This document shows, in pieces, positions 10,021 through 51,226 of a DNA stretch of 64,000 bases (positions within the stretch are counted from its first letter, which is position 1; each line of letters begins with the position of its first letter). The translations under genes were made by a program, and so were the position numbers. The stretch lies in the IMG/VR virus record IMGVR_UViG_3300042386_001233, positions 1-64,000 of that record; one strand, written 5' to 3'. The notes below the pieces were generated by a model. That model saw only the letters and a program-made list of their open reading frames with translations. It was not told where the DNA came from and ran no database searches.

Positions 10021-10037
10021 TTATAGGAGATTTTTAA

Positions 10038-33088: not shown

Positions 33089-36000
33089 ATGGCAAATAAA
33101 CTGGTAAAAGTTTTTGATAATATAGGATTTAATTTTCAAACCATTAATGGTAAGATTAGTCCTATAAAAATCCTATCTGGATTTAATGGATTAAACCAAA
33201 ATCATGTCGGGTACTATATACCATATATTTGTCGTAACAAAAAACTAGGCCTATTAGAAATTGGTATAGGAGATGTTCAAAATGATGATACCGGCAATGT
33301 AGTAATTAATAAGCATAAAATAGTAGTATCTTCAAACAATAATAATGATGTTAACTTTGGTAACGAAAAAGATAATGAGTTTTTTGTTTTTGCTAATCAA
33401 AATATCTTTAATAGCAGTATCAGCAATGTTGTGGTAATAGATTCAAATACGGTCATAGACAACGTATCCGCTATCTATTTAGCAGATTGCTCGAATCAAC
33501 CAATATCTGTTACACTACCAGAAATATCAAACTCAGAGAATATTGTATTAGAATTTAAAAATATTTCACCAAATTATAATTTATCTATTAGAGACAGTAA
33601 GGATGGTTCGGTATCGATATTAGACGATCAAAAGAGCTATGCTAAACTAGTTCCAACTAATGATTCTTGGGTGTCTTTGGCGGACAATAATACAGAATAC
33701 GTTGGCATCCAATCATCAGACCAGCAGATCTCTGCTCAAAGTTCTCCAACAGGAGACGACTTTTCACTACAATACAAAGAAGGTAGCGACCTTGTTGGGT
33801 CTAATATTTACTGGGATTCAGTTAATAACGACTTATTATTAGGCGCAGACAATAGTACTGACGCTTACTCAGTTATTCCAACATCTGGTAATAGGCCTCT
33901 ATATATTAATCAGAAAAAATTAAATAGCGATTTTGTTGTTTATGGTAGTGGTAATAGGAATTTATTCTTTTCTTATGATGGTAGATTAGGTTTGAATATG
34001 CCTTCGGGATCTCGACCATCTACTATATTTCATATTGTAAATACCGTATGTCAAGAAGGTCTCAGACTAGAAAATCGTAACGCTTGTCACCCAGCAGATA
34101 TCACTTTATTTCATAAGCCTAACTCGGCTATCAACAATGGATCTGTTGTATCACAAATTAACTTGGCTGGTAAAAATACTAGTGGTAATAAAGTAGACTA
34201 CGGAGCTATAGAAGCACTAGCAATTAATACCACATCATCTCTAGAAGAAGGTGGACTACAATTTAAGATTGCTGCCGCATCTACCGGAATAAAAGTTTTT
34301 GATAGTAATTATTCAGCCACTACAGTGGGTTATAGCGGAAATAATTTAACTATTAATCGCACAGGATCAACAGTGGTAAGAAATAACAGTGCCGCTGTTA
34401 GTTTATCTTCTAATAGTGTGAATATAAGTGGATCATCAGTAGCCTTAAGTGCACCTAGTCTAGTATTTGGTAATGCCTCATCCTCCATCAGTGCTCCTGG
34501 TGCTATCTCTGCTGGAGCAATATCTGCAACGTCATTACAGTCAAATAATATAGTCGCCCCAAATATTGGTAGTGGTAGCTTTATTACTACTAACGGAAAT
34601 AATCAATTAGTCGGCAGTACCACAATGTCTGTTAATTCTTTGGGCACCTTAAATCTCCCTATTGCATCAAATAAACTATTGCAAACTACTACTAATGGTG
34701 CAATTACTGGTATTTATTCTACGGATGACTATTTCAGAACAGACGGAGATATTGTCTGGAATAAGTATACGCACAGACTAGTTTCTGCTTGTTTGAAGCA
34801 GATAACATTTATTAATCCTGTTTCTGTTGAAGAATATAGTATTGGGGATCAATTAGCAGTAGTGTTATCGTCATCTACTGTTTATAGAAGAATTGTAGAT
34901 GTTTATATTAATAACAATCTTATTACTGGACTATTAGTTGATCAAGATGTCTCGTCCTCAGATGTTGACGGTATAACAGTATACTCTGTTACTAAGGGTG
35001 GATATCTTGATATGCAAATATCTACCGAGGGTGGAGTAATATCTGACTCTACAAAAAATGTTTTAAGTGCTAGAGCAGGAACAAGCACAACATTTAATAC
35101 ATTACAAAAAGATATAGATTTTTCTGTATACGGTATAGACTCTGTTCCAGCTTTAAAGGTTAAAGCCAATTCTGGTAAAATCAGTATCATTTCTGGCATG
35201 TATCGACCATTTTCGCCCAAGCATGAATTGCCCGCATTTCCAATTGTGGTAACTACTGGCGGCGTTGGTTTATCTAATCTATATTCTTCAGCTAATTTTA
35301 ATTATAGTAATACTCAGAATCTATTTTCTGGTATAGTATCTGATGTTGGGTCTAATGGATTGCCTTCTCATTATGGAACGTATGATCAGAACGGTAATGC
35401 TTCGGAATGGGTAGAAAAACCATACATGCTAGAAAGTAGAGATAAAGAAGAATACGCTGCTGGTGGTTCGTATTCTACTTCAAATGCTTTAGGAGGAAGC
35501 GGTCTCAAACATATTGAGACGTTAACAAGAGCATCTGGCTATTCTTACGTTGGTTTTAGAGTTGCTTCTCTCTACAACACAACAGACCCAACAACCATCT
35601 CTTCAACAGACCAACTATCTATGAGTTTTGTTGGCGTTATTGATCCTCAAAATACCGAAGACGTTTCTACAACATATATAAAAAATGGTGAAACATTTAA
35701 TTCAATAATTATTAATAACCTTGGTGTTGTTGATAATATGTATAGAATTGGTAGATATGAAGTAACTAATAAACAATACTGTCGATTCCTAAATGCTGTG
35801 GCTAAAAATAACGATAGAGGCTTGTATGACTCTAGAATGAGCAGTCAAAATGTTGGTGGTATTAGTCGAATATTTGATGCAGAGTATATCTATACTACTA
35901 AGCCTAATATGGACAATAAGCCCGTATTATTTGTAAACTATTTAAGTGTTATAAGGTTTATAAATTGGCTTCATAATGGAGCTTCTGTAACTATTAGTGA

Positions 36001-36598
36001 GTCAAATATTGACTATAATTTGGATATGGGTGCATATTCCATAATACCTATTGGTACAGACTCATATAATGTTGTTCAATCCTCTTATAGAAAATACTGG
36101 CTACCTAATCTAAATGAGTGGCATAAAGCGGCTTATTTTGAACCAGTAGATGTTAATGCTTATACTGGAACATCAACCGTAATGGTTAAGAGAGAAGATC
36201 CTTATCTTGTTGCCTCTGGTCTAGATTCAGACACTAATAAATTTAAGGAATTATTTGCGAATTTAAGTGTTAGTGGATGGTTATATGTTGATCATTTAAT
36301 TGTCGGAGACGGAACAATACGGTCATCCAAGAGATTTACTGGACTAATTCCATCTACTGGTACTACTACTAATACTCAAAATGTCACAACACAAACTACT
36401 AATAATATTAATTTGCCACCAACCTCATTGGACGATATTATTAATAGCGATAATAATGCTGTAGAAACAACAGCTTCAACAGTATCTGTTGGAACTAGCA
36501 TATCTGGTATCCCACTAAGAAGAGCTCAAGATACTGATTGTGTTGAAAATCCACCTTGGTTCTGCAATCCTAATAATACTGGTCCAAGTTTATTTTAG
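33089..36598 (+). CDS. Tail fibre-like protein with C-terminal circularly permuted FGE-sulfatase/CLec-fold domain
   Basis: 1169 aa; beta-rich fibre motifs (N..DFxVYG). YGTYDQNGNASEW..GFRVA precedes YRIGRYEVTN..EWHKAAYF. Confidence 0.7.
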   Translation: MANKLVKVFDNIGFNFQTINGKISPIKILSGFNGLNQNHVGYYIPYICRNKKLGLLEIGIGDVQNDDTGNVVINKHKIVVSSNNNNDVNFGNEKDNEFFVFANQNIFNSSISNVVVIDSNTVIDNVSAIYLADCSNQPISVTLPEISNSENIVLEFKNISPNYNLSIRDSKDGSVSILDDQKSYAKLVPTNDSWVSLADNNTEYVGIQSSDQQISAQSSPTGDDFSLQYKEGSDLVGSNIYWDSVNNDLLLGADNSTDAYSVIPTSGNRPLYINQKKLNSDFVVYGSGNRNLFFSYDGRLGLNMPSGSRPSTIFHIVNTVCQEGLRLENRNACHPADITLFHKPNSAINNGSVVSQINLAGKNTSGNKVDYGAIEALAINTTSSLEEGGLQFKIAAASTGIKVFDSNYSATTVGYSGNNLTINRTGSTVVRNNSAAVSLSSNSVNISGSSVALSAPSLVFGNASSSISAPGAISAGAISATSLQSNNIVAPNIGSGSFITTNGNNQLVGSTTMSVNSLGTLNLPIASNKLLQTTTNGAITGIYSTDDYFRTDGDIVWNKYTHRLVSACLKQITFINPVSVEEYSIGDQLAVVLSSSTVYRRIVDVYINNNLITGLLVDQDVSSSDVDGITVYSVTKGGYLDMQISTEGGVISDSTKNVLSARAGTSTTFNTLQKDIDFSVYGIDSVPALKVKANSGKISIISGMYRPFSPKHELPAFPIVVTTGGVGLSNLYSSANFNYSNTQNLFSGIVSDVGSNGLPSHYGTYDQNGNASEWVEKPYMLESRDKEEYAAGGSYSTSNALGGSGLKHIETLTRASGYSYVGFRVASLYNTTDPTTISSTDQLSMSFVGVIDPQNTEDVSTTYIKNGETFNSIIINNLGVVDNMYRIGRYEVTNKQYCRFLNAVAKNNDRGLYDSRMSSQNVGGISRIFDAEYIYTTKPNMDNKPVLFVNYLSVIRFINWLHNGASVTISESNIDYNLDMGAYSIIPIGTDSYNVVQSSYRKYWLPNLNEWHKAAYFEPVDVNAYTGTSTVMVKREDPYLVASGLDSDTNKFKELFANLSVSGWLYVDHLIVGDGTIRSSKRFTGLIPSTGTTTNTQNVTTQTTNNINLPPTSLDDIINSDNNAVETTASTVSVGTSISGIPLRRAQDTDCVENPPWFCNPNNTGPSLF

Positions 36599-36617
36599 AA
36601 AAAATTAAGGAATAATT

Positions 36618-39110
36618 ATGAGTACGCCATGGTACACAATATTCGGTCCTAGGTCTTGGCCAGGAGTAGAAATCAATACCGGCAATAAAAAGATAGATGC
36701 CGTATACTATAATTTATTGAGCAACAACAATGTTCAGTTAGCTGCTAGCGGAGTTATGTGGCTAGTTGCTGGTACTGGGATTAGAATGATTACTCCTGGT
36801 TATGTTGATGTTAGTGGGCTAAGAGCACATACTCTCCTTTTTAAGGACTCAAAGAGAATTGACAATAGTGGAAATATTATACCAACATATAGTGGAAGTA
36901 TAGGATCTGTAGCATATAAATACGATGATCATAATCTTGCTGGTATTCCTAGTGACGAATTAGTGTATAATAGCGGTCTTGGTAAGTTAACTATGCCATC
37001 TAAAGACATTGGTTTATTATATGTCAGTAGAGGTAATGTTGACGATGGAGCAGCCCCAACAAAAGAGTTTGGCTCATTCTCAGATATTGTTCCAGTGCCA
37101 AGAAAAGTTATTACAAGTACAGAGCCGGGTGTTCCTCCAACAATTATTCCTTCTTATGTTGCTGTAAATACTCATGCTATATTTAGTAGCGGAGTATCTA
37201 TTTATCCTAATTTAGAAAGCTATAAAGGAAGCATTCTGACCCATATGGGTTCTGGTAATAAGGTAGAGTGGACAAGTGCTCCGTATTTGAAAGCAGATGG
37301 AGCAACGTGGACTAGATTTCCAAAGAGGCCAATATATATTGATGGAGACAGAGTAATCTTCTATACAACAAGGCCTTCGTGGGCGCAAGACTGGGTTAAT
37401 AGTCCAACACTTGAAAGTCTGGCAACAGAATTTGGCAATGGCGAAGATACCATAGAACTAATAACATCGCTAGATAGATCTGTTACACATGTGAAGTTCG
37501 CAACAACTATTCTCTACGGTGTTGGAGATGTTCAGTCAGGAGATGGTCCAGATTTATTAACTCCACTCAACTCGCTATTTACTCCTGTAACATTTACAGA
37601 TCCTGACGAAACAGACCCAGACGCTCCGCAAGCAGCAGGATATGCTGTTAAAATTTGTAGTCCAAAACCTTGGGATGGCTCATCATCAAAAGTTGATGTT
37701 AATGGATATGCGTTTTCTGTTACCAAGGGCGCTTATCTAAGTATGCAACTATCTCCAGATGCTACCGATAGATTTAATTGTATTGATAATTTCCCTAATA
37801 GTCCATTTAGATTTAAGCCAAGTACATCTAATAATATCAGTATAAGGCCTAATGTTAATACTGGTTTTAATTTACTAGCAGAGAATATTGACTTTATGGT
37901 TTTTGGCCAGCGGAAGACAAGCTTTAATAATTATGAAGAAGGAGTATTTGGTCTAGATAATAGTCTAACTCCAACTGGTTTGACACCAGCTTTTAAGGTA
38001 GATGCTAATATTCCTAATGCCGCAAGTGGCAGTATAGAGTCTGGCATTTATTATATTAAATATTTAGATAGAGCAAGACTAAATCCTTCTGGATGGAATT
38101 ATGATACTAATCCCAAGATTACGATAAACGCTAACTCTGCACATAGGATATCGTCGTTAGCTACTGGCATTAATACTGGGTTGGGATTATATGCTGATTT
38201 AACAGTAAGCGGAATAACATATAGTACTCAGGTTATGGCTGATAAAATTTTCTTGAATCCTAAGCCAACAGATGACAACTCTAGTATTTATATTGCTAAT
38301 TCTTTACTTACTCTTGATAGGTCTGGTAGGATTATTTCTCGTATTCCAAGACAAAATCCAACAGTCCCATCAGCACCAAGTGGCATAAGGTTAGACCCAG
38401 GTCACACCAACGGTATAGGCAACACAGAAGTTTCTCTAGTATGGACAGCACCAGAAAGCGACGGTAGAAGTGCTTTATTAGACTATGTTTTACAATTTTC
38501 TAGTAATAATGGAGAAACGTGGACAGACTTACCCAATAATTTATATAGTATAGATAGAGCATCAGATATTACTCCATTAGCAACAATTGTTGGACTATCT
38601 CCATTAGTCTCATACCGATTCAGAGTGGCTGCACAAAACGGTATTGGCCTTGGAGATTACTCAAATGCTTCAACTTCAATTACTCCTGGTTCTGAAGTTC
38701 CAAAACGACCAGATAGTTTAGTTGCTAGTAGAGCATTTGATGAAACTTTGTATTCAAACATAACGCTATCTTGGGATGCTCCTCAAGCAGGAGCAGACGA
38801 TGTATTAGGATATGTTATTGAAGAATCAACAGACAATGGAGCCACTTGGCAATATTATAACCTTCTAACTGCCTTAATATCTTCAACGTCAGAATTAATA
38901 TCTGGAACTGAGTCTGCGTTAGATTATGCTTATAGAGTATCAGCATGGAATTCTTATGGTCAAAGTGCTTTCTCTTATGTTTATGTTCAAGGTAATGTTA
39001 TTGACGAAGTTGATCCAGAAGAAGCTGCTAGACAAGAAGAAAAAGCTAATGACGTTTTAAGTAATTGGGATTTCGGTAAAGTACTATTCACAGGAGTATG
39101 CCCCACATGA
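36618..39110 (+). CDS. Tail fibre-like protein with two C-terminal fibronectin type III domains
   Basis: 830 aa. PSAPSG..LVWTAP..DY..YRFRVAAQNGIG and PKRP..LSWDAP..GY..YRVSAWNSYG are FN3 signatures; the middle domain is shared with the 33089 protein. Confidence 0.75.
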   Translation: MSTPWYTIFGPRSWPGVEINTGNKKIDAVYYNLLSNNNVQLAASGVMWLVAGTGIRMITPGYVDVSGLRAHTLLFKDSKRIDNSGNIIPTYSGSIGSVAYKYDDHNLAGIPSDELVYNSGLGKLTMPSKDIGLLYVSRGNVDDGAAPTKEFGSFSDIVPVPRKVITSTEPGVPPTIIPSYVAVNTHAIFSSGVSIYPNLESYKGSILTHMGSGNKVEWTSAPYLKADGATWTRFPKRPIYIDGDRVIFYTTRPSWAQDWVNSPTLESLATEFGNGEDTIELITSLDRSVTHVKFATTILYGVGDVQSGDGPDLLTPLNSLFTPVTFTDPDETDPDAPQAAGYAVKICSPKPWDGSSSKVDVNGYAFSVTKGAYLSMQLSPDATDRFNCIDNFPNSPFRFKPSTSNNISIRPNVNTGFNLLAENIDFMVFGQRKTSFNNYEEGVFGLDNSLTPTGLTPAFKVDANIPNAASGSIESGIYYIKYLDRARLNPSGWNYDTNPKITINANSAHRISSLATGINTGLGLYADLTVSGITYSTQVMADKIFLNPKPTDDNSSIYIANSLLTLDRSGRIISRIPRQNPTVPSAPSGIRLDPGHTNGIGNTEVSLVWTAPESDGRSALLDYVLQFSSNNGETWTDLPNNLYSIDRASDITPLATIVGLSPLVSYRFRVAAQNGIGLGDYSNASTSITPGSEVPKRPDSLVASRAFDETLYSNITLSWDAPQAGADDVLGYVIEESTDNGATWQYYNLLTALISSTSELISGTESALDYAYRVSAWNSYGQSAFSYVYVQGNVIDEVDPEEAARQEEKANDVLSNWDFGKVLFTGVCPT

Positions 39111-39676
39111 GCCTTTTATTATTCAAAAGAGACGAAACAGGATTAGGCCACCCAGCACCAGAGCAATTATCTATTGGAGAAATTGTTATTAATAGTGTTA
39201 CTGGTAAGTTATATACCAAGCTAGTAGATGGTTCTGTTATAGAATTTATAGGACAAAAAATTTGCTTTGATCCTCTTCCAGAAATATTAACATATTATGA
39301 AAATGCTCTTATTTCTAATGATATAGTGAATAGTTTTTGTTGCACTGGTGCGTTATTAGAATTTGAGGTTAAAAAATTAAAGTTAGAGCCGTCCCCGTAT
39401 TCTTTTAGATTAACAGAACTAACAAGTAATGCTGCTCCACAAGATATTGCTATACAGGATGCCAAATTTTCAGTGTATACAGAATCCACTCCAGCTGTAC
39501 CACCAAGTACAACTCCAACTTCTATAACCTATAGAAAAGCTATTGTGCCAATTAATTTAGCAATAACTCTAAATACCCAAGGTATTAGTTTATTTAAATT
39601 TGCTGTTATAGGAGATCCTGGTAGACCACCACTAATAGAAAAAATTATCACCATCAGATGCCAAGAAGCCGTATAG
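39107..39676 (+). CDS. Virion protein with Mtd/hyaluronidase-type N-terminal fibre motif
   Basis: Start moved to ATG 39107 (AGGAG 10 nt upstream, ATGA overlap). FKRDETG..P..LSIGEIVINSVTGKLY matches the KR...L..GE..IN..DGKLY motif. Confidence 0.55.
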   Translation: MSLLLFKRDETGLGHPAPEQLSIGEIVINSVTGKLYTKLVDGSVIEFIGQKICFDPLPEILTYYENALISNDIVNSFCCTGALLEFEVKKLKLEPSPYSFRLTELTSNAAPQDIAIQDAKFSVYTESTPAVPPSTTPTSITYRKAIVPINLAITLNTQGISLFKFAVIGDPGRPPLIEKIITIRCQEAV

Positions 39677-39686
39677 GATAACTCTT

Positions 39687-40574
39687 ATGATAAATACTAT
39701 TAATCATAGTTTAGAAGAAGGCGAGGCCGGATTATTGCTTCGCTTTAATGTTGACTTAGCACAGCTCAAAAAAAGAGATCAGTATATTGTACAGTTTGAC
39801 TCTCCGGTTTCTTTACCATATGATCCTCCTATTTCTCTGTCCTATACGCCAGATCCTCCGTCATATTCTATTATTAATAGTGGAGGAATTATTCCTCAAA
39901 TTTTTGTTAAGATCAAATCTCTTCATAGAGCAGAGACTAAGACCTTGCTTAGATTAACTATTAAAGATATCTATAATACTATATTGTATGTTGATTACTT
40001 ATTAATAATTTGCTCTCCACAGTCTACACTTAAATTTGAAGCATCACTACTACCATCAAATATCTCAGGAAATGTTGGAGATAATGGTGGTAGTAAAATA
40101 AAGTTAGCACAACCCAATACCATTAGATTAGATGTTGGAATGTCAGTTACCGGTCCTGGTCTATCAAGTACTATATCTTATGCTATCAAGAGAATAGAAA
40201 CTGCTGATACTATTGAATTAGATAAATTAGTACCAACATTTGACAACAGAACAATAAGTGGAACATTTACTTTTACCAGAACCACAGGATGCGTAGACCC
40301 TAGCTCATTGGCGCTAAGGTCATCTCAGCCAGTATATACGATCTTAGATTTTAGTAATAATTGGACATATGAAATTGGTAATAGAATTATTGCTCAATTT
40401 ATTGTGGAAAATAAAGAAGATAATTTAGATACTATAGTATTATTGCCAATTAAAAATGCTTCTTTATTAAATAATCCTGATAACTCGGCTGCTATACCAA
40501 GTGTTTCCATAATTAAGGCTGGTGGCAGAGTTATGAATGATTCTCAGTGTTTATCTGGACTGGTTTTTAGTTAA
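39687..40574 (+). CDS. Hypothetical beta-rich virion protein
   Basis: 295 aa; in the operon; no family recognised. Confidence 0.6.
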   Translation: MINTINHSLEEGEAGLLLRFNVDLAQLKKRDQYIVQFDSPVSLPYDPPISLSYTPDPPSYSIINSGGIIPQIFVKIKSLHRAETKTLLRLTIKDIYNTILYVDYLLIICSPQSTLKFEASLLPSNISGNVGDNGGSKIKLAQPNTIRLDVGMSVTGPGLSSTISYAIKRIETADTIELDKLVPTFDNRTISGTFTFTRTTGCVDPSSLALRSSQPVYTILDFSNNWTYEIGNRIIAQFIVENKEDNLDTIVLLPIKNASLLNNPDNSAAIPSVSIIKAGGRVMNDSQCLSGLVFS

Positions 40575-40588
40575 TTGACAAATAGCAT

Positions 40589-40594
40589 GGTGTA
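40589..40594 (+). promoter_or_regulatory. GGTGTA motif, candidate late-promoter element
   Basis: Intergenic, 41 nt before the ATG at 40630; the context TGGTGTAAT resembles an extended -10. Confidence 0.4.
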
Positions 40595-40629
40595 ATTAAT
40601 TATGAGTTTCCATATTTTGAGTAAATAAT

Positions 40630-41829: not shown

Positions 41830-41835
41830 ATTATC

Positions 41836-43125: not shown

Positions 43126-43138
43126 TAAGGTATAATAA

Positions 43139-45454
43139 ATGTCAAATGTTAAAAGCATAGGAATTAAAGTTAGTGGATTAAGTCCACTAGATACATATAA
43201 TTATACATTTTCAAATAAGGGAGGAAATTGGCCAGTTAAACTATCTCCATTATCTGGATCTTTCAAGTCCAATTCTATAGGCAACGTATATGAGATTAGA
43301 TCATATGTAGAATTTTGTGCAACAACGGGGCTATGTCCTCCGGGAGCAACTAACGTTTTATACAATGCTCCATATATTGATAGTAATGCTGGTGCCTCTG
43401 TAGACAGAACAACACTGTATTCTGTAATAGGCTTATCTCTAGTATCAGCAGCAACGTCTGAAAAAGTCTTAGATACTCAAGCACTAATAGAGTGCGAAAA
43501 TTGCTTACCAAACATCTCTCTAACAGCAGAAGAAAATATCGTGTTAGATGAGTCATCATTAAATACCAGACAAATAGCTACAGCAGTCAATGGTTTGATT
43601 CCCAACCAATCTTATACATATGTCTTTACATCAATCGATAGTAATTGGCCAGTAAAAGTAACTCCAGTTTCTGGCACTATTCGCTCATCAGCCGATTCTG
43701 CTAATATTAAGAGTCTAGTAACTCTTTGTGCCAATTCTGGAGATTGTGCTAATGGATTGTTTTTTGTTCCAACACAAAATTGTGATGCTGGTCAGAGCCC
43801 GTTCTCAGCTATCAAGCTTACAGTATCTCCAGTAAATAGTAGCCTACAAGAGCCCGTATCCGCTGATTTTACCGTATCTTGTGATAATTGTATTCCTAAA
43901 TTATCATTAATTTTACCATCTACCGTTAAACTTGATAGATTATCTAAGAATAAAACTTCTATAAATTTAGTAGCATCCAATCTTAAGCTTGGAAAACAAT
44001 ATGTTTATCATATTAATAGTGTAGATGCTAATTGGCCAGCTATTGTTACCCCCATTAGTGGTAAGCTAACTGCACATTATGATAGTATGAACATCCCACT
44101 GACTGTTACATTATGTCCATCAACAGGACTATGCCCATCAGCCAGCAGCGACGTAATAGACTATAGTATAGACAGTAACTGCTTATTAGGCTATTCAAAT
44201 ATGGAGAGGTATGTTAGATTTAATGCTGATATTTCTGGAAATGAGTGTGATAGCGGATACGACAAAACCTATAGCAATGATGTAACGGTATCTTGTGTTG
44301 ATTGTTTGCCAAGAGCCAAAGTCTCTATTCCAAGCATAATGCTCTTATCTTCTGAGGATAAAAACGTAAATACCTTTACTTCTGATATAACCGATCTAGC
44401 TCCTGGACAAAAATATGAATATTCATTTAAATCAGTAGATAGTAACTGGCCCACACTGGTATATCCTATAACTGGTATTATTAGCACAGAATCAACATCA
44501 ATATCATTATCATCTAGAATAACATTTTGCAGATCAACGGGTCTATGTGAGAATGCTGAAAATCTTTTAGATTATACCTTTGATAATAGCAGTTTATATA
44601 GTGAGGGTCTTGAGAGATATTCTTCCATCGTTTTAGAGATTAAACCAGTAGACTGTTCATCTATACCGGTTTCTACAAGCAATACCATGCTAGTTAGATG
44701 TGACGGCTGTTTGCCAGTAGCATCTCTAACTCACTCATCCAATAGTGCTATTCTCTCTAGTCCAGGAATAAACAGATTCCAACTATCAACATCTGCTCAA
44801 AACCTAATTCCCGGAGAAACTTATTCATACGGAGTTAACTATGTTGATAGTAACTGGCCAACAATTGTGTCTAAACAATCTGGTGAATTTGTAGCTGTAT
44901 CTTCTAATAAAAATATCTTAACTGAATTGCAGTTCTGTTTTCCTAGCGGTACTTGTTCTCAAAATCCTGTTGATGTGATGCCATATAGAGTTAGTCCGAT
45001 TACTGCTAATACTAATAAATATGCTGTTATTAATCTTTCTATTACTGACACTACTAGCTCAAGTAGTCCTACTATTAGCGATGACTTCACACTAACCTGT
45101 TCAAATTGCCTACCAAATATTAATTACACTATGGCATTTTCTGGCAGTCCAACATTAGTACTACCAAGCAATTGTTGTTCTGGTAATCAAGTTATGAGAG
45201 TAAATATTGGCGGAGCTATTGCTGGAGATATTCATAATTATGTTCTATCTTCATCTTCTCCAAACGTATCATTCATGCCAACCAGCGGACAGATAATTTT
45301 CAAACAAGGCGGTTCTGGTACTATTGTTAGCATGATGAGCACATCACTAAGTAGTGAAACATCAGCAATAGCACAATGCAAGTTAACTAATGTTAGTTCT
45401 AATATTGAGACTGTAGACTTTTTGGTTATCAAATGCGGAACGAATGCCTGCTAA
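43139..45454 (+). CDS. Cys/NWP-repeat protein 3 (5 modules plus a degenerate sixth)
   Basis: 771 aa; NWP at 43226, 43643, 44030, 44444 and 44852. Confidence 0.7.
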   Translation: MSNVKSIGIKVSGLSPLDTYNYTFSNKGGNWPVKLSPLSGSFKSNSIGNVYEIRSYVEFCATTGLCPPGATNVLYNAPYIDSNAGASVDRTTLYSVIGLSLVSAATSEKVLDTQALIECENCLPNISLTAEENIVLDESSLNTRQIATAVNGLIPNQSYTYVFTSIDSNWPVKVTPVSGTIRSSADSANIKSLVTLCANSGDCANGLFFVPTQNCDAGQSPFSAIKLTVSPVNSSLQEPVSADFTVSCDNCIPKLSLILPSTVKLDRLSKNKTSINLVASNLKLGKQYVYHINSVDANWPAIVTPISGKLTAHYDSMNIPLTVTLCPSTGLCPSASSDVIDYSIDSNCLLGYSNMERYVRFNADISGNECDSGYDKTYSNDVTVSCVDCLPRAKVSIPSIMLLSSEDKNVNTFTSDITDLAPGQKYEYSFKSVDSNWPTLVYPITGIISTESTSISLSSRITFCRSTGLCENAENLLDYTFDNSSLYSEGLERYSSIVLEIKPVDCSSIPVSTSNTMLVRCDGCLPVASLTHSSNSAILSSPGINRFQLSTSAQNLIPGETYSYGVNYVDSNWPTIVSKQSGEFVAVSSNKNILTELQFCFPSGTCSQNPVDVMPYRVSPITANTNKYAVINLSITDTTSSSSPTISDDFTLTCSNCLPNINYTMAFSGSPTLVLPSNCCSGNQVMRVNIGGAIAGDIHNYVLSSSSPNVSFMPTSGQIIFKQGGSGTIVSMMSTSLSSETSAIAQCKLTNVSSNIETVDFLVIKCGTNAC

Positions 45455-45481
45455 TTATATAGACACAAGAGGATTTTGATA

Positions 45482-48400
45482 ATGCTAGATATTATAGGAT
45501 TAAATTCCGCAAACTATAACAATTGTATAGAATGGAGATATATCCCAGGAGATTTAACTACTGTTGGATATAACGGAGGTCCAAGTCAATACAATACATA
45601 TGATCAGTCTGGTAATATCTGGGAGTGGACAGAAGAGTTTGATACTATCAGTGTTGGCGGAAACGATTACTATTATAGAAGAATTCGAGGAGGTTCTTTT
45701 AGGGATAGTGCTCAAACTTTATCTTCTTTGTATACTCATTCAAGACATATTCCCGGTAGTGCCGAAGCAGACAATAATCTTGTTATTAAGGATAATATTG
45801 GTTTTAGGTTGATTTCTAGTGGAAATCCTTTATCTCTACAGCATTTTGTTAATGTTGGAGATATCAACAATTCTCCTCTGGTATTGACCGGAGATTATGC
45901 TGGTTCATATGGTTCTGTTAATTACGAGTATTTAATAAATCAAATACCTGTAACTAATGATGATTATGTAGTTTTTTTAAATACTGTTGATTCTAATGGG
46001 ACTAGGATTCAACTAAGCGAAACCTTCAATGCCTCTGGTCAATCTACTGCAAATAATCAAAATGTATTATATCATTTTTATATGTCTTCTGATCAAAGAG
46101 GTGGCATAGAGTTTAATAGTGGTGAAGTTGTTGGTAGAAAATATAAATCTAAAAGTAATATGGGCAATAAGCCTGTAAATTTTATTACTTGGTATATGGC
46201 TGCAAGTTATTGCAACTGGCTACATAACAAGGTTTCTGATCCAGATACTACCACAACTAATACGGGGGCTTATGACTTATCGTTAGATGATAATCTTATA
46301 GTTCGCGCTAATGATAGTTATTATAGCTTGCCGTCGGACAATGAATGGTTCAAAGCCGCTTATTACAAGGGCGGTTCATCAGATGCCGGTTATTGGACTT
46401 ATGCAACAAGGTCAGATTCTGATCCAACATGTATTGATGTTGACGAAAACGGAATAGGCCCATGGCAAAAATCTCAAGATTATGTTAGTATACCATTAAA
46501 TAATTTGGTTATCGGTAATAGTTATACTGTTAATTTCGAAATATCAAAAACATCACCGTATTCTGTAGATCTAGATAAGAATAGCTATTCTTTCATCGCT
46601 TCTGCTCCTACTGAGAGTGTTGTTGTTTGTGTCACTAAATATTTAATAGTAGATTTTGCTATTATAATATACTCATTAACAAATAATAATTCTGGACTAC
46701 TTGAATCTGTTGATTCTGTAGTTTTACAATGCTCTTCTAGAAATTCTTGTAAACTTACTCGCACCCCAACTCCTACTAAAACTGTTACTCCAACACCAGC
46801 AGCTAGTCAGAGTCCTACTCCAACAATAACTCCTACTCCGTCGAGAACTCCAACAATAACGCCAACAATTACAGTTACCTCAACTGCTACTCCAACAGTT
46901 ACTCGAACAGTAACGCCCACCCCGTCTCTTACAGCTTCTGAAACTGCTACTCCGACAGCCACAAGAACATCCACTCCCACGCCAACACCAACAATTACTG
47001 TAACAAGAACAGTAACCCCAACCATAACAGTAACTAGAAGCGAAACACCAACTCCAACAGTAACTAAAACAACAACACCAACTCCAACAGTAACTAAAAC
47101 AACAACACCAACCCCAGCAGCTAGTCAAACACCAACGCCAACTGTTACTCCAACAATAACAGCATCTAGAACCCCAACCACTACAGCTACTCCAACCATT
47201 ACCATTACTCCTAGTATTACTATAACTAGAAGCGAAACACCGACTCCAACAGTTACTAGAACAAATACTAGAACTCCAACAGTAACACCATCAGTAACAG
47301 CTTCATTAACTCCAACTATAACAGTAACTAAAACAACAACACCAACAGTTACTCCAACAGTCACCCCTACTCCATCAAGACCATTTGCTTTTGTCAGCAC
47401 ATGGAATACATTAAGTACTAGTACTGGTAGTAGTACGACTAGTCGAATTAAACTACCATTAATATTAGGTGGTACTTATAACTTTATTGTTAACTGGGGA
47501 GATGGAAATAGTAATAATATAACATCTTGGAACCAATCCGAGGTGACTCATACGTATGCTAGTACTGGTATTAAAACCATAACTATTACTGGAACTATCA
47601 AAGGATGGGAATTTAATAATAGTGGAGATAGATTAAAGATTACTAATATTAGCAATTGGGGTCCGTTGGATATGAATGTGACTGGCAGTTCCAGAAACTT
47701 TAATGGTTGTGCTAATTTAAATATTACTACTGGAGGATCTCCAGTTATGCCAACCAATTGTACTGGTATGTTTGAGGGTTGTAGTGCTCTTGTTGGAGTT
47801 GGCATTAACGATTTTAATATGGCGACCGTAACCAATACTTCATATATGTTCTCTTCTTGTTCGCTTTTTAATGCTCCAATTAATAATTGGAATACTAGTA
47901 GCGTAACTAATATGAGTGGCATGTTCTTTGAAGCTATTAGCTTTAATCAGCAAATAGGAACTTGGAATACTAGTAGAGTTACTAATATGAGCAGCATGTT
48001 TAATGGGGCTTCAGGTTTTAATCAGCCATTAAATACTTGGAATACTTCAGCAGTAACTAATATGAGTAGCATGTTTACTAGTACAGGGCAGTATAATCAA
48101 AGCATGAGCAGTTGGGACACCAGCAAGGTTACTAATATGAGTAGCATGTTTCTCAATGCTTTATCTTTTAATCAAGATATTAGTATGTGGAATATATCAT
48201 TAGTGGTATCTATGAATGATATGTTAAGAGGTACCAGTTTTAATCAAACCAACTACCATGCTTTACTTACTTCTTGGGGTAGTAGTACTACCCCCACTCA
48301 AAACAATGTTACTCTTGCTGTTGATCAAGAATATTCTTCAATAAATGCTACAATAGTAAGTAGAAGACTATATTTAATAAATACTAAGGGTTGGAATATT

Positions 48401-49228
48401 ATTGATTATGGTAATGAAACTAGTATGATAGTTAGATATAATAGTACAAATATTACTTGGCAGGTTAATAACGGTTGGCAATGGACGAATGAATTATACT
48501 CTATATTAAAACCACAAAATGATACCATAGTAGAAGTTAACTGGGGAAATGGACAAAATTTTGTATATAATTCGAGTAATGCTATATTAGCAGGAGTCTA
48601 TTCTCCTACTTATGCTGCTAGTACTACATATACCATTAGAATAACAAAAAGGAGTGGTACTGGACTTATTGAACTTGGCCCTTCTGCAAATCATACTGCC
48701 GGTCAGACGTATGGTATGCCACAATATTATACTCCATTTCAAAATAGCGTAACTGCCATAGATAGATTTGGTAGTAATATTAAACTTAGATCTGGAGAAA
48801 ATCACTTCGCCTATTATAATAATCTGGTTTCTGTTTCTAGTACGGACGCACCTATTAATCCATCAGATAATTCCTACCGTAATATCTTTCTTAACTGTTC
48901 AAACTTTGTTGGAACTGGTTTGAACAATTGGAATACTAGCTCTATAACTAATATGTTTGGTGCATTTCAGAATAATTCTAGTTTCACTTTTGATTTGAGA
49001 AACTGGAATTTATCTAATGTTACAGATATGGGTCAGATGCTGTTGAACGCTACTAGTTTTGGTACCGGCAACTACAGTTTTCTGTTGCAGCACTTAAATG
49101 ACAATAATACTAAAAATAATGTTCCTTTAAGAAGTAGTTCTAGATATTTTAATCAAGCCAGCGTAACTTCTGCAAGAGCGTCTTTGGTGGCAAGAGGATG
49201 GACTATTATCGATTTAGGAGCAATATAA
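45482..49228 (+). CDS. Adhesin-like protein: permuted FGE/CLec domain, Thr/Pro linker, PKD-like domain, BspA/DUF285 repeats
   Basis: Start preferred at ATG 45482 (GAGGA upstream; the track starts at TTG 45476). Repeats WNTSxVTNMSxMF..FNQ; VNWGDG PKD-like motif. Confidence 0.8.
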   Translation: MLDIIGLNSANYNNCIEWRYIPGDLTTVGYNGGPSQYNTYDQSGNIWEWTEEFDTISVGGNDYYYRRIRGGSFRDSAQTLSSLYTHSRHIPGSAEADNNLVIKDNIGFRLISSGNPLSLQHFVNVGDINNSPLVLTGDYAGSYGSVNYEYLINQIPVTNDDYVVFLNTVDSNGTRIQLSETFNASGQSTANNQNVLYHFYMSSDQRGGIEFNSGEVVGRKYKSKSNMGNKPVNFITWYMAASYCNWLHNKVSDPDTTTTNTGAYDLSLDDNLIVRANDSYYSLPSDNEWFKAAYYKGGSSDAGYWTYATRSDSDPTCIDVDENGIGPWQKSQDYVSIPLNNLVIGNSYTVNFEISKTSPYSVDLDKNSYSFIASAPTESVVVCVTKYLIVDFAIIIYSLTNNNSGLLESVDSVVLQCSSRNSCKLTRTPTPTKTVTPTPAASQSPTPTITPTPSRTPTITPTITVTSTATPTVTRTVTPTPSLTASETATPTATRTSTPTPTPTITVTRTVTPTITVTRSETPTPTVTKTTTPTPTVTKTTTPTPAASQTPTPTVTPTITASRTPTTTATPTITITPSITITRSETPTPTVTRTNTRTPTVTPSVTASLTPTITVTKTTTPTVTPTVTPTPSRPFAFVSTWNTLSTSTGSSTTSRIKLPLILGGTYNFIVNWGDGNSNNITSWNQSEVTHTYASTGIKTITITGTIKGWEFNNSGDRLKITNISNWGPLDMNVTGSSRNFNGCANLNITTGGSPVMPTNCTGMFEGCSALVGVGINDFNMATVTNTSYMFSSCSLFNAPINNWNTSSVTNMSGMFFEAISFNQQIGTWNTSRVTNMSSMFNGASGFNQPLNTWNTSAVTNMSSMFTSTGQYNQSMSSWDTSKVTNMSSMFLNALSFNQDISMWNISLVVSMNDMLRGTSFNQTNYHALLTSWGSSTTPTQNNVTLAVDQEYSSINATIVSRRLYLINTKGWNIIDYGNETSMIVRYNSTNITWQVNNGWQWTNELYSILKPQNDTIVEVNWGNGQNFVYNSSNAILAGVYSPTYAASTTYTIRITKRSGTGLIELGPSANHTAGQTYGMPQYYTPFQNSVTAIDRFGSNIKLRSGENHFAYYNNLVSVSSTDAPINPSDNSYRNIFLNCSNFVGTGLNNWNTSSITNMFGAFQNNSSFTFDLRNWNLSNVTDMGQMLLNATSFGTGNYSFLLQHLNDNNTKNNVPLRSSSRYFNQASVTSARASLVARGWTIIDLGAI
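46760..47375 (+). repeat. Thr/Pro-rich low-complexity coding repeat including an exact 30-nt tandem duplication
   Basis: TPTxTxT units; ACACCAACTCCAACAGTAACTAAAACAACA at 47045-47074 and 47075-47104. Confidence 0.9.
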
Positions 49229-49674
49229 TGAGATTAATAAACAATATTAGCAAATACATGTATTACTATATATCGGAGAATCAAAGCTACGGGTTTCTTA
49301 ATTTTGGACAACAACTAGAGACAAATAAAAATATTGTTTCTTTTTTATCAGTTGAAGAATGGAAAAATCATATTAATACTGAACTAGCAACAGATATTTG
49401 GCTGAATGAAGATTTAAAAAAGGAACTAGAAGAGCAAACTAAAGATACAGCAAAACATAGCGATGTTGGATATTTAACAGCTTACAACTTTAGACTACCA
49501 GTAAATGAAGAAACTGATTCTAAGCTTAATCAACTATTATCGTCCAACACAGATCCTGTGCGGATAACTGCTATGTCGGGTGACGTTTATACTCTAAGCA
49601 AAGCCGATCTAATATCTTTGATTGATCAATATACAAAAGACAAACCCTTATATCTAGCTATGGTAGAGAAATAA
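49228..49674 (+). CDS. Hypothetical protein, possible fibre chaperone
   Basis: Start moved to ATG 49228 (TAATG overlap, AGGAG 7 nt upstream); follows the adhesin gene. Confidence 0.55.
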   Translation: MRLINNISKYMYYYISENQSYGFLNFGQQLETNKNIVSFLSVEEWKNHINTELATDIWLNEDLKKELEEQTKDTAKHSDVGYLTAYNFRLPVNEETDSKLNQLLSSNTDPVRITAMSGDVYTLSKADLISLIDQYTKDKPLYLAMVEK

Positions 49675-49675
49675 T

Positions 49676-51226
49676 ATGTTATTAACTTGCAATAGTGCTA
49701 ATTACGGAAGCAGAGCAGACTGGAATACGTTAGATGGCAACGTATCAACAGTTGGCTCTAATGGTAAAAGTAGCTACTATGGCACTTTTGATCAAACTGG
49801 AAATGTTAATGAGCTATTAGACACTATTAGCGGTAGCTATCCTGTGGTCCGTGGAGGCTCTTTTAATAACGACCAAACCTATCTAACTAAAACATGGTTT
49901 AGCACCCAGGCTCTGGATGGGAAAAGTAGCAATATAGGATTCAGAATAGCAAAAGCATCTTCAAGCATAGATTCCACAAACTACGTATTAGTTGAAAATG
50001 CTGAAAATAATGGAGATAGTAGCAATAATGATTTTGGTAGAGTTAATTATAGTTATCAAATAAAAAAATATTTAGTAACAAATAGTGAATATGTAGAGTT
50101 TTTGAATGCCATTTCTACTAAACCAAATGGATTAGAATTATGGCGTGCTGATATGGGAGACCCTAATAGGAGAGGTGGTATAAGCCGCACTTTAGTTAAC
50201 ACATCATATGTCTATGCCGCTCTGCCAAACATGGGAAACAAGCCAGTCAATTATATCAATTGGTTTAATGCTGTTAGGTACATCAACTGGCTTCATAATG
50301 GTAAGCTTACTGGAACACCAACAGCTGGAACCACAGAAAGTGGTGTTTATACATTATCTAATAATATAATTCAGGGTACTAATAAGCCATCACCAGCTAA
50401 TAAAAATTCATACTGGCTTCCTTCTGAAGATGAGTGGTATAAAGCAGCATACTATGACCCTAATAAAAACGGACTTGGTTTACCAGGATACTGGACTTAT
50501 GCAACAATGTCTGATTCTGTTCCTGATGCTGCTGTTGTTGATGCGGCAGGAACAGCAAACAATACATATAGTAATCCTAATATTTGTATTAGCCCCACAC
50601 CAACCCCAACAGTTACGCCGTCTATTACGGCGTCTCCAACAGTTACTCCTAGTATAACGGTGTCGTTATCTTCAACAGCAACTGTTACTCCAACAGTAAC
50701 TCCAACTATAACTATTACATCTAGTGTTACTCCTACTAAAACACCTACTAAAACACCAACCATGACTCGCAGTTTAACTCCAACACCAAGCCTAACTGCT
50801 AGTGTTAGTCCTAGTATTACTGTTTCAATATCTCCGACCAGAACCCCTACAATGACTAGGACTCTAACTCCAACAGTTACTCCTACTGCTAGTGTCACGG
50901 TTACTCCTTCAAAAAGTTTATGTGCTCAGAAGAAATTAGGAGAATTATTATATCAAAGTGCTGTTTATGTAAATGATGACATTCAAGTATTACATAAAGG
51001 ATTTTTATTACAAGGTAAATTATCTCCAAACGTTAGTTTACTATCTGAGCAACCTAATGCTTCTCCAACGCCGACCAATACTGTTAGTCCAACGAATACT
51101 CCAACCATAACAGTTACCAGAACGTTAACGGCAACCCCTACCCTAACTAGAACATTAACGCCAACTCCTACCACAACAAGTACACTGACACCAACACCAA
51201 CTCCTACTCCGTCATCTAGCGGTTAG
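49676..51226 (+). CDS. Permuted FGE/CLec-domain protein with Thr/Pro-rich C-terminal half
   Basis: 516 aa. YGTFDQTGNV..RGGSF..GFRIA is followed by YQIKKYLVTN..EWYKAAYYDP; PT-rich tracts run to the C-terminus. Confidence 0.8.
   Translation: MLLTCNSANYGSRADWNTLDGNVSTVGSNGKSSYYGTFDQTGNVNELLDTISGSYPVVRGGSFNNDQTYLTKTWFSTQALDGKSSNIGFRIAKASSSIDSTNYVLVENAENNGDSSNNDFGRVNYSYQIKKYLVTNSEYVEFLNAISTKPNGLELWRADMGDPNRRGGISRTLVNTSYVYAALPNMGNKPVNYINWFNAVRYINWLHNGKLTGTPTAGTTESGVYTLSNNIIQGTNKPSPANKNSYWLPSEDEWYKAAYYDPNKNGLGLPGYWTYATMSDSVPDAAVVDAAGTANNTYSNPNICISPTPTPTVTPSITASPTVTPSITVSLSSTATVTPTVTPTITITSSVTPTKTPTKTPTMTRSLTPTPSLTASVSPSITVSISPTRTPTMTRTLTPTVTPTASVTVTPSKSLCAQKKLGELLYQSAVYVNDDIQVLHKGFLLQGKLSPNVSLLSEQPNASPTPTNTVSPTNTPTITVTRTLTATPTLTRTLTPTPTTTSTLTPTPTPTPSSSG

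What the first reader, a model, noticed from the sequence alone, without database searches (positions are those of the whole stretch)
35288..50570. Three circularly permuted FGE-sulfatase (C-type lectin fold) domains
In the usual SUMF1/FGE-type proteins (from my knowledge of Planctomycete/Verrucomicrobial PEP-CTERM members and DGR targets) the order is V.D..N, Y.IGKYEVTN, NKPVN..W, EWYKAAY, ANY, YGTFDQ.GNV.EW, RGGS, GFR at the C-terminus. All three copies here (35288-36145, 45506-46460, 49694-50570) begin at SAN(Y/F), run through YGT(F/Y)DQ..RGGS..GFR, and only then have the normal N-terminal half ending after EWxKAAY. The breakpoint is the same each time, so one permutation preceded the triplication. 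It moves the ligand-binding/DGR-variable segment from the C-terminus to the domain interior and frees the new end for fusion to Thr/Pro stalks.
Basis: partly seen in the sequence, partly recalled or inferred. Interest (0 to 1): 0.8.

Follow-up and report, generated by a model that had tools for sequence, protein, structure and literature searches.

The report
Circularly permuted FGE-type lectin domains, phage tail
Three tail-module proteins of an uncultivated 244-kb phage carry a ligand-binding domain of the formylglycine-enzyme / C-type-lectin fold whose two halves are in swapped order, and this rearranged form turns out to be widespread in environmental phages but was not seen in the closest bacterial relatives.

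Summary
Pfam FGE-sulfatase (PF03781) hits all three proteins above threshold. In each, model positions ~156-255 come first and ~35-138 second. A family profile maps the same reversed way onto TvpA and CarF.

AlphaFold2 folds the p3 unit as one compact domain (pLDDT 93, pTM 0.92). Foldseek against the PDB finds only FGE-fold proteins at the top, but aligns just 57-115 columns, with none at E<=0.001. A canonical-order relative used as a control aligns over its full length to the same proteins, with 76 hits at E<=0.001.

The permuted unit is not special to this genome:
- It appears in nearly all of the best 76 IMG/VR loci.
- It appears in none of the best 80 bacterial-genome loci, which are all canonical or canonical tandem.
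- A single origin is not rejected (AU p=0.66).
- A second breakpoint variant and tandem canonical relatives fit an origin by duplication and truncation.

The domains lack the FGE cysteines and sit just downstream of a 6454-aa tape measure protein. No DGR repeat was found. The likely role is host-surface binding. I rate it a new variant of a known fold.

The parts
33089..36598 (+). p1, a 1169-aa protein encoded directly after the tape measure gene. The permuted FGE-type domain is near its C-terminal end.
   Evidence: ORF list. PF03781 at 48.9 bits with 2 stretches.
35279..35578 (+). p1 C-half (SANF...YGTYDQNGN...GGS...GFRV). It matches the C-terminal part of the Pfam model but comes first in the protein.
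   Evidence: Matches PF03781 positions 156-253. Half-HMM hit at aa 731-830.
35666..36151 (+). p1 N-half (YRIGRYEVTN...NKPV...NWLHNG...EWHKAAY). It matches the N-terminal part of the Pfam model but comes second.
   Evidence: Matches PF03781 positions 35-124. Half-HMM hit at aa 860-1021.
45482..49228 (+). p2, a 1248-aa protein. Layout: permuted domain at the extreme N-terminus, then a Thr/Pro stalk (~46750-47390), then DUF285/PARCEL repeats (~47690-49225).
   Evidence: ATG start with AAGAGGA upstream. PF03781 at 52.5 bits and DUF285 at 221.7 bits. PARCEL repeat hits. Thr/Pro repeat families D2, D3, D5 and D6.
45497..46378 (+). p2 permuted domain. C-half is aa 6-115 and N-half is aa 119-299.
   Evidence: PF03781 positions 173-254 come first, then 36-138. 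Half-HMMs agree.
49676..51226 (+). p3, a 516-aa protein. The permuted domain is at the extreme N-terminus, followed only by Thr/Pro-rich stalk (50561-51223) with one short non-repetitive island.
   Evidence: Translation. PF03781 at 55.4 bits.
49685..50524 (+). p3 permuted domain. C-half is aa 4-96 and N-half is aa 99-265; the fold continues to the invariant P283. This is the unit that was modelled.
   Evidence: PF03781 positions 162-255 come first, then 35-127. AF2 pLDDT 93.2, pTM 0.92. Invariant columns.
13704..33068 (+). Context: a 6454-aa tape measure protein. It defines the region downstream as the tail-tip / fibre module.
   Evidence: Hits to phrog_28, 4211, 167 and 1533, all 'tail length tape measure protein', E 4e-24 to 3e-17.
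36618..39110 (+). Context: an 830-aa protein with fibronectin-III domains and weak minor-tail-protein hits. It lies between p1 and p2.
   Evidence: phrog_23968 and phrog_6977, 'minor tail protein'. PF00041.

Best explanation
Each of the three proteins carries a genuine circular permutant of the non-enzymatic, FGE-type C-type-lectin-fold ligand-binding domain. The chain starts in the loop just before the 'N-x-ANY' motif. It runs through the YGT(F/Y)DQxGN and RGGS motifs, the variable (ligand-binding) segment and the GFR strand, which is the old C-terminus. A hairpin linker of about 10-15 residues joins this strand to the old N-terminal strand. The chain then runs through the normal first half and ends after EWxKAAYY...YWxYAT.

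Shown or tested:
- The permuted form arose once or very few times.
- Among the best matches it is viral only.

Inferred:
- It most likely arose by truncation of a tandem-domain ancestor like the tandem PEP-CTERM proteins of Planctomycetota and Verrucomicrobiota.
- In this phage the three paralogous modules sit in the tail-tip/fibre gene block and act as host-surface, probably glycan, binding heads. Two of them are displayed at the N-terminal end of long Thr/Pro stalks.
For: Order of the halves:
- The Pfam order is reversed in all three copies.
- The mapping onto the sequences of solved structures is also reversed. Profile positions 15-98 align to TvpA chain 195-292 and CarF 199-267; profile positions 177-268 align to TvpA 90-174 and CarF 74-165.

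Fold:
- AF2 gives one compact domain, pLDDT 93.2 and pTM 0.92.
- Its secondary-structure elements are the cyclic shift of those in the canonical control model.
- For the permuted model, the leading Foldseek PDB hits are all FGE-fold proteins, but with only 57-115 aligned columns, TM<=0.25 and 0 hits at E<=0.001.
- The canonical control P0115 (N-half 52% identical to that of p3) gives 313-366 aligned columns, TMt 0.45-0.59 and 76 hits at E<=0.001.

Linker and distribution:
- The C-to-N linker has a median of 13 aa in 127 permuted proteins. The inter-domain linker in 73 canonical tandems has a median of 54 aa and a minimum of 15.
- Stand-alone units occur at N-termini, internally and at C-termini of many proteins.
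- Of the best 76 viral loci, almost all are C-N. Of the best 80 genome loci, none is.

Origin:
- The permuted/canonical label changes 3-4 times on the trees, against 34 expected by shuffling. The AU test does not reject one clade (p 0.66).
- A second breakpoint variant exists: P0111 and unit 1 of P0252.

Function:
- No Cys lies between RGGS and GFR in any of the three copies.
- The genes lie in the tail module after the tape measure protein.
- The most variable block, p3 residues 51-90, corresponds to the TvpA variable region, which is the binding site in DGR proteins (PMC6328139).
Against: - The 3D equivalence of the permuted and canonical folds rests on AF2 confidence, the order of secondary-structure elements and partial Foldseek hits.
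- Only p3 was modelled. p1 and p2 are inferred from alignment (32-40% identity, all invariant columns kept).
- The binding function and virion location are inferred from context only. PHROGs and NCBIfam give no functional hit for the domain-bearing parts.
- How p2 and p3, with N-terminal heads and C-terminal stalks, attach to the virion is unexplained.
- The deep tree is poorly resolved (43 of 100 forks open).
Confidence: 0.75

Rival explanations
1. These are not single domains. They are leftovers of a tandem array, namely the back half of one canonical domain plus the front half of the next. Such halves would be non-functional, or would complete their fold only by swapping with another chain in an oligomer.
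For: The permuted query aligns colinearly across the C1-N2 junction of many tandem canonical proteins (33-45% identity, up to 99% coverage). Phage fibres are usually oligomeric.
Against: - The AF2 monomer model is one compact domain, pTM 0.92.
- The C-to-N linker is consistently short (median 13 aa), unlike inter-domain linkers.
- The unit is conserved as a stand-alone module in more than 150 proteins, at 32-100% identity, with 18 invariant columns spread over both halves.
- There are no orphan halves in the window.
Confidence: 0.07
2. The domains are targets of a diversity-generating retroelement located elsewhere in the 244-kb genome. The permutation would relocate the variable region to the interior of the gene.
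For: The closest solved structure is the DGR variable protein TvpA. The segment equivalent to its variable region is the most variable part of the family. One permuted relative, P0246, also carries an Mtd_N domain.
Against: - No direct repeat matches any of the three C-half coding regions in the 64-kb window.
- In 76 related viral loci, the only repeats are between paralogous copies, and they fall in the conserved 5' part.
- Differences among 73-95% identical orthologues are spread over many loops, not confined to one block.
- No reverse transcriptase hit appeared among the proteins scanned.
Confidence: 0.06
3. The domains are enzymes (FGE, sulfoxide-synthase or PvdO-like) that modify a host or phage substrate, rather than binding modules.
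For: They belong to the PF03781 superfamily. JGI annotates homologues as 'formylglycine-generating enzyme required for sulfatase activity'.
Against: - No cysteine lies in the RGGS...GFR segment, where FGE carries its two copper-binding cysteines. Entries 2aft (C336S) and 2afy (C341S) align to this part of the profile.
- No DinB or other partner domain is present.
- That segment is the least conserved of the family.
- The architecture (Thr/Pro stalks, repeats, tail module) is that of adhesins.
Confidence: 0.04

Closest known systems
Canonical FGE-sulfatase-domain surface proteins of Planctomycetota and Verrucomicrobiota (single or tandem domains, often with a PEP-CTERM anchor)
   Same: They are the closest sequence relatives, 33-55% identical per half, and carry all the same motifs: IGKYEVTN, NKPV, NWLHNG, EWYKAAYY, YWxY, ANY, YGTFDQGGN, RGG and GFR. 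They are non-catalytic, and some have short linkers in their tandems.
   Different: Their order is canonical: N-half then C-half in 80 of 80 best genome loci. They are cellular proteins with signal or anchor helices. The window's domains are cyclically shifted, viral, and fused to Thr/Pro stalks.
[quoted passage not shown]
   Same: TvpA is the best structural and solved-sequence neighbour. These are ligand-binding proteins rather than enzymes. The variable surface is encoded by the segment before the GFR/beta5 strand (PMC6328139).
   Different: In Mtd, TvpA and TaqVP the variable region is at the very C-terminus (PMC6328139). Here it is about 50-90 residues from the N-terminus. No TR/VR/RT was found.
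Formylglycine-generating enzyme (human SUMF1, bacterial FGEs) and paralogue pFGE/SUMF2
   Same: Same superfamily by Pfam and by partial Foldseek hits.
   Different: The catalytic cysteines are absent, the topology is permuted, and the genes sit in a phage tail context.
Natural circular permutants generated by tandem duplication and end truncation (the general mechanism; textbook examples are certain lectins, saposin/swaposin and DNA methyltransferases, cited from my own knowledge)
   Same: Tandem canonical relatives exist. The old termini are joined by a short linker. A second breakpoint variant exists in the same family.
   Different: I found no description of such a permutation for the FGE/CLec fold in the searchable literature.

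Membership tests
FGE-sulfatase superfamily (Pfam PF03781) | Significant match to the family HMM above the gathering score | tested here: met
   48.9, 52.5 and 55.4 bits against a cutoff of 23.3. Each half alone scores 23.4-40.7 bits.
FGE-sulfatase superfamily (Pfam PF03781) | Colinear order of the domain as in the model and in solved structures | tested here: not met
   Model positions 156-255 precede 35-138 in all three copies. The order is also reversed against the TvpA and CarF chains.
FGE-sulfatase superfamily (Pfam PF03781) | [quoted passage not shown] | tested here: inconclusive
   The model is confident and single-domain. The best hits are all FGE-fold but only partial, as expected for a permutant given the control result. 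A permutation-aware superposition was not possible because no coordinates were available.
Formylglycine-generating enzymes (catalytic) | Pair of copper-binding cysteines in the segment between RGGS and GFR | tested here: not met
   There is no Cys in that segment of p1, p2 or p3. The segment is the most variable of the family.
DGR variable (target) proteins | Variable region with a cognate template repeat and a reverse transcriptase nearby | tested here: not met
   No repeat of the C-half coding DNA occurs in the 64-kb window or in 76 related loci beyond paralogue-paralogue matches. The other 180 kb of the contig were not available.
DGR variable (target) proteins | [quoted passage not shown] | tested here: not met
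   The homologous segment is at p3 residues ~51-90 of 516. See PMC6328139 for the canonical position.
Phage tail fibre / receptor-binding proteins | Encoded in the tail module downstream of the tape measure gene | tested here: met
   The tape measure gene is at 13704-33068. p1 starts 21 nt after it. A minor-tail-like FN3 protein lies between p1 and p2. Relatives lie next to a Phage_tail_C gene or carry an Mtd_N domain.
Phage tail fibre / receptor-binding proteins | Presence in the virion and binding to the host surface | not testable with these tools
   This needs virion proteomics and binding assays. The host is unknown.
Circular permutants arising by duplication and truncation | Old termini joined by a short linker; the new termini fall in a loop of the canonical domain | tested here: met
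   In p3 the sequence runs from GFRIA through about 12 aa to the YVLVEN strand. The median linker is 13 aa. The breakpoint lies in the ~10-residue loop between YWxYPTxSNxxP and NxANY of the canonical consensus.
Circular permutants arising by duplication and truncation | Tandem-duplicate intermediates and alternative breakpoints in the same family | tested here: inconclusive
   Tandem canonical relatives are abundant. A second breakpoint variant exists. The C1/N2 nearest-neighbour test is only weakly positive and is biased by how the hits were collected.

The most novel reading that the evidence does not exclude
A single ancient circular permutation of the FGE-type C-type-lectin fold created a virus-specific receptor-binding module. 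That module then spread by module shuffling through a large group of uncultivated, mostly large, environmental phages. It tolerates whole-domain insertions at the fused old termini, and it gives phages a binding-head geometry (N-terminal display on Thr/Pro stalks) that the canonical fold does not offer. A permuted-specific profile would then serve as a marker for phage adhesins and as a new scaffold for engineered binders.
Probability: 0.4. Interest if true: 0.65.

Novelty: new variant of a known kind. Interest (0 to 1): 0.6.

Why it matters
The FGE/C-type-lectin fold is the scaffold that DGRs use for massive sequence variation, and it is a common bacterial surface-binding module. A natural permutant matters for four reasons.

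- It is well conserved and apparently restricted to viruses, which shows the scaffold tolerates rewiring of its termini. That is useful for protein engineering and for understanding how the fold forms.
- Standard annotation gives only two weak partial hits and the misleading name 'formylglycine-generating enzyme', and sequential structure searches such as Foldseek return almost nothing.
- It provides a candidate marker for receptor-binding proteins in a large group of uncultivated phages. These have no BLAST-detectable relative among 50,697 deposited phage genomes.
- Two breakpoint variants and the tandem precursors occur in one family, giving a clean natural case for the duplication-and-truncation route to circular permutation.

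Tried and rejected
1. **Stop-codon read-through joining ORF 43139-45454 to p2 (same frame).** Rejected. There is a TAA stop, an AAGAGGA Shine-Dalgarno sequence and ATG 45482. The upstream ORF has no FGE half.
2. **DGR.** I looked for a template repeat by window-wide repeat search and by blastn of every C-half coding region against its own locus. I also checked the pattern of differences among close orthologues. Nothing DGR-like was found.
3. **Nearest-neighbour test of the tandem-truncation model.** The question was whether the permuted C-half is closer to C1 and the N-half closer to N2. Best hits were C1 91 versus C2 35, and N2 42 versus N1 29, with N0 at 98. Mean scores barely differ, and the tandem set was selected through the C1-N2 junction, so I treat this as uninformative.
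4. **Foldseek against BFVD.** No meaningful match.
5. **tblastn against GenBank phages.** No match for the p3 domain or for a neighbouring structural protein.
6. **PHROGs and NCBIfam naming of the domain-bearing proteins.** This returned only a spurious 'kinase' PHROG and unknown-function families.
7. **ESM Atlas.** The nearest clusters are canonical bacterial FGE-sulfatase proteins. No permuted cluster was identified.
8. **Literature.** Four searches for a permuted FGE or C-type-lectin fold found nothing relevant.
9. **tRNA scan for host clues.** None found.
Full report
**What is in the sequence**

The region lies in a block of same-strand genes. It begins with a 6454-aa ORF (13704-33068) whose N-terminal 500 residues match several PHROG tape-measure families at E down to 4e-24. 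Three downstream proteins match Pfam FGE-sulfatase (PF03781) above the gathering score, each with two stretches:

- p1: 33089-36598, 1169 aa
- p2: 45482-49228, 1248 aa
- p3: 49676-51226, 516 aa

Searching the pieces apart shows the same pattern in every copy. The first piece matches model positions ~156-255 and the second piece matches ~35-138.

p2 really starts at the permuted end. The upstream in-frame ORF stops at TAA 45452-45454. It is followed by AAGAGGA and ATG 45482 and has no FGE-like part. A six-frame scan with half-domain HMMs built from the three copies finds exactly three C-half + N-half pairs and no orphan halves.

**Is it a real circular permutant?**

A profile of 57 permuted units (alignment A1) maps onto solved structures in reversed order:

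- Profile positions 15-98 align to the C-terminal end of TvpA (chain residues 195-292 of 294) and of CarF (199-267).
- Profile positions 177-268 align to TvpA 90-174 and CarF 74-165.

AlphaFold2 on A1 gives one compact domain for p3 residues 1-295, with pLDDT 93.2 and pTM 0.92. Its secondary-structure elements run in this order: two strands, a short helix, the GFR strand, the YVLVEN strand, a strand, helix alpha1, a short helix, a strand pair, the NWLHNG helix and the EWYKAAYY helix. This is the cyclic shift of the order in a canonical-order control model (P0115, alignment A2, pLDDT 92.3).

Foldseek is a sequential aligner, and the two models behave very differently against the PDB.

| Model | Leading hits | Aligned columns | TM | Hits at E<=0.001 |
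|---|---|---|---|---|
| Permuted p3 | FGE-fold proteins only (TvpA, pFGE, PorK, CarF, FGEs) | 57-115 | <=0.25 | 0 |
| Canonical control P0115 | Same fold family (adds ToxD, EgtB, PvdO) | 313-366 | TMt 0.45-0.59 | 76 |

The control's N-half is 52% identical to that of p3. The partial matches of the permuted model therefore reflect topology rather than divergence or a poor model.

Comparing the canonical consensus with the permuted consensus locates both changes:

- The new termini fall in the ~10-residue loop between YWxYPTxSNxxP and NxANY.
- The old termini are fused as GFR(I/V)A, then about 10 residues, then the (Y/F)VxV strand.

I could not run a permutation-aware 3D superposition because model coordinates are not exposed.

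**How widespread is it, and where?**

The window is the first 64 kb of IMGVR_UViG_3300042386_001233, a 243,821-bp contig. A word-index search returned 6305 relatives and an exhaustive HMMER search returned 6533 cluster representatives. Mapping half-domain order on the best hits gave these classes:

- Single permuted units (C-N).
- Multiple permuted units separated by hundreds of residues (C-N...C-N).
- Canonical tandems (N-C-N-C), many with a PEP-CTERM anchor and from Planctomycetota or Verrucomicrobiota.

The permuted query aligns across the C1-N2 junction of the canonical tandems, which explains their high coverage.

A direct comparison of collections is the key result. In the best 80 loci from one genome per 185,579 species, every ORF is canonical (N-C or a tandem) and none is C-N. 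In the best 76 IMG/VR loci, nearly all are C-N: 78 single C-N ORFs, counting those cut at a locus end, plus C-N-C-N forms.

Two permuted relatives that also appear in NCBI-sourced data lie in phage-like neighbourhoods:

- Nearby genes encode SSB, dCMP deaminase, RNR, PhoH, ClpP and Phage_tail_C.
- One of the two relatives combines RCC1 repeats, the permuted domain and an Mtd_N domain.

No deposited phage genome (50,697 records) has a tblastn match, and BFVD has no structural match.

One caveat applies. The genome scan reached its 600-stretch limit, so rare cellular or prophage copies are not excluded.

**Origin**

In permuted proteins the C-to-N connection is short, with a median of 13 aa (n=127). 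The C1-to-N2 linkers of canonical tandems have a median of 54 aa and a minimum of 15.

I built trees of 370 domain units, with the halves aligned separately and concatenated in canonical order.

- FastTree needs only 3 changes of the permuted/canonical label. All 167 permuted units lie on one side of a branch (support 92), with 16 canonical units nested among them.
- A 103-row IQ-TREE needs 4 changes, against 34 under label shuffling.
- The tree constrained to a single permuted clade is not rejected and in fact scored better than the free search (AU p=0.66).

Deep resolution is poor, so 'one or very few origins' is the safe reading.

A second permutation variant exists. In P0111 and in the first unit of P0252, the chain starts before YW(I/L)PSxxEWYKAA, keeps the canonical YWxYAT...NxANY connection intact, and ends after NWLHNG...GAYxL. 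The second unit of P0252 has the breakpoint seen in the window. Different cut points around the same fused old termini are what duplication followed by end truncation predicts. A nearest-neighbour test of that model was only weakly positive and is biased, so the mechanism remains an inference.

**Function**

The three domains lack any cysteine between RGGS and GFR, where FGE has its two catalytic cysteines (compare the C336S and C341S entries among the hits). They are not FGE enzymes.

The block p3 51-90 aligns to the variable region of TvpA. In Mtd, TvpA and TaqVP that region forms the ligand-binding surface and sits at the very C-terminus (PMC6328139). In the permuted family it is the most variable block.

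No DGR is evident:

- No template-like repeat occurs in the window or in 76 related loci.
- Orthologue differences are spread over many loops.

The gene context is a tail-tip or fibre module. In p2 the head is followed by a ~210-aa Thr/Pro stalk and DUF285/PARCEL repeats. In p3 it is followed only by Thr/Pro stalk. In p1 it is near the C-terminus.

I therefore read the three modules as paralogous host-surface, probably glycan, binding heads. The three copies are only 32-40% identical, which suggests different ligands. How N-terminal heads on C-terminal stalks are anchored to the virion is not explained.

**Comparison and novelty**

The closest known families are:

- the canonical PEP-CTERM-type FGE-sulfatase surface proteins of Planctomycetota and Verrucomicrobiota, which are closest by sequence;
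- the DGR variable proteins TvpA, Mtd and TaqVP, which are closest by structure and mode of action.

The window's domains belong to the PF03781 superfamily by homology. They fail its colinearity, the FGE catalytic signature and the DGR-target criteria. Four full-text searches found no description of a circularly permuted FGE or C-type-lectin fold. Absence from that library is not proof of absence.

I rate this a new variant of a known kind. It is of moderate to good interest for protein evolution and for phage receptor-binding-protein annotation. It is not a new mechanism.

Noticed in passing
window 13704-33068 (+): A single 6454-aa ORF whose N-terminal ~500 residues match tape-measure PHROGs. 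It carries three dispersed copies of a DTVPAMLTPGEFVV-type motif (repeat family D13). If tail length scales with tape measure length, as it does in known siphophages, the tail would be exceptionally long.
   Followed up: partly
window 87-2021 (+): A 644-aa ORF built almost entirely of about 12 tandem 51-aa (153-nt) repeats containing IQSDGKIICGG...RLN.DGSLDSSFN. From memory this resembles beta-propeller 'delta-60'-type repeats; I did not test that.
   Followed up: no
window 7575-11138 (+): Three consecutive paralogous genes of ~370-410 aa share conserved blocks (repeat families D9 and D12). They have no PHROG match and no tblastn match in GenBank phages.
   Followed up: partly
window 43139-45454 (+): A 771-aa protein with four internal repeats of ~130-138 aa (family D11, spacing 387-414 nt). 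It gives FN3-like Pur_ac_phosph_N/PhoD_N hits and lies directly upstream of p2, in the same frame.
   Followed up: partly
L094:60-3983, L095:60-3983, L096:161-3982, L091:1-3945, L090:1-3537: The gene upstream of the p3 orthologue in related viral contigs, apparently the p2 counterpart, has an insertion of ~270-300 aa between the C-half and the N-half. The insertion sits at the fused old termini of the permuted domain. This suggests that the hairpin is an exposed site that tolerates insertion.
   Followed up: no
P0111 (whole), P0252 residues 76-375, L149:2594-4837, L161:3896-4975: A second circular-permutation variant of the same domain. Its breakpoint lies ~45 residues earlier, before the LPSxxEWYKAA helix. 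In P0252 it occurs together with a unit that has the window-type breakpoint.
   Followed up: partly
window 47690-49225 (+), C-terminal half of p2: Two blocks of DUF285 / PARCEL repeats, otherwise typical of Mycoplasma and Listeria surface lipoproteins, sit at the far end of the Thr/Pro stalk. p2 therefore carries putative binding modules at both ends.
   Followed up: no
P0081: A canonical tandem (N-C-N-C) relative is annotated as a hypothetical protein of the green alga Picochlorum sp. SENEW3, on a 1.28-Mb contig. This is an unexpected eukaryotic record for this otherwise bacterial and viral family.
   Followed up: no
window 1-64000: The window equals positions 1-64000 of IMGVR_UViG_3300042386_001233 (243,821 bp). 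A second IMG/VR contig (3300042517_000805) carries an identical p3 domain. No tRNA gene occurs in the window, and most of the structural proteins scanned have no PHROG or GenBank-phage match.
   Followed up: partly
P0189 (3810 aa), P0245: There are tree exceptions. One canonical unit of the giant protein P0189 groups (SH-aLRT 95) with a permuted unit of P0041. One permuted unit (P0245) sits among canonical units. These could reflect reversion, a second origin or tree error.
   Followed up: no
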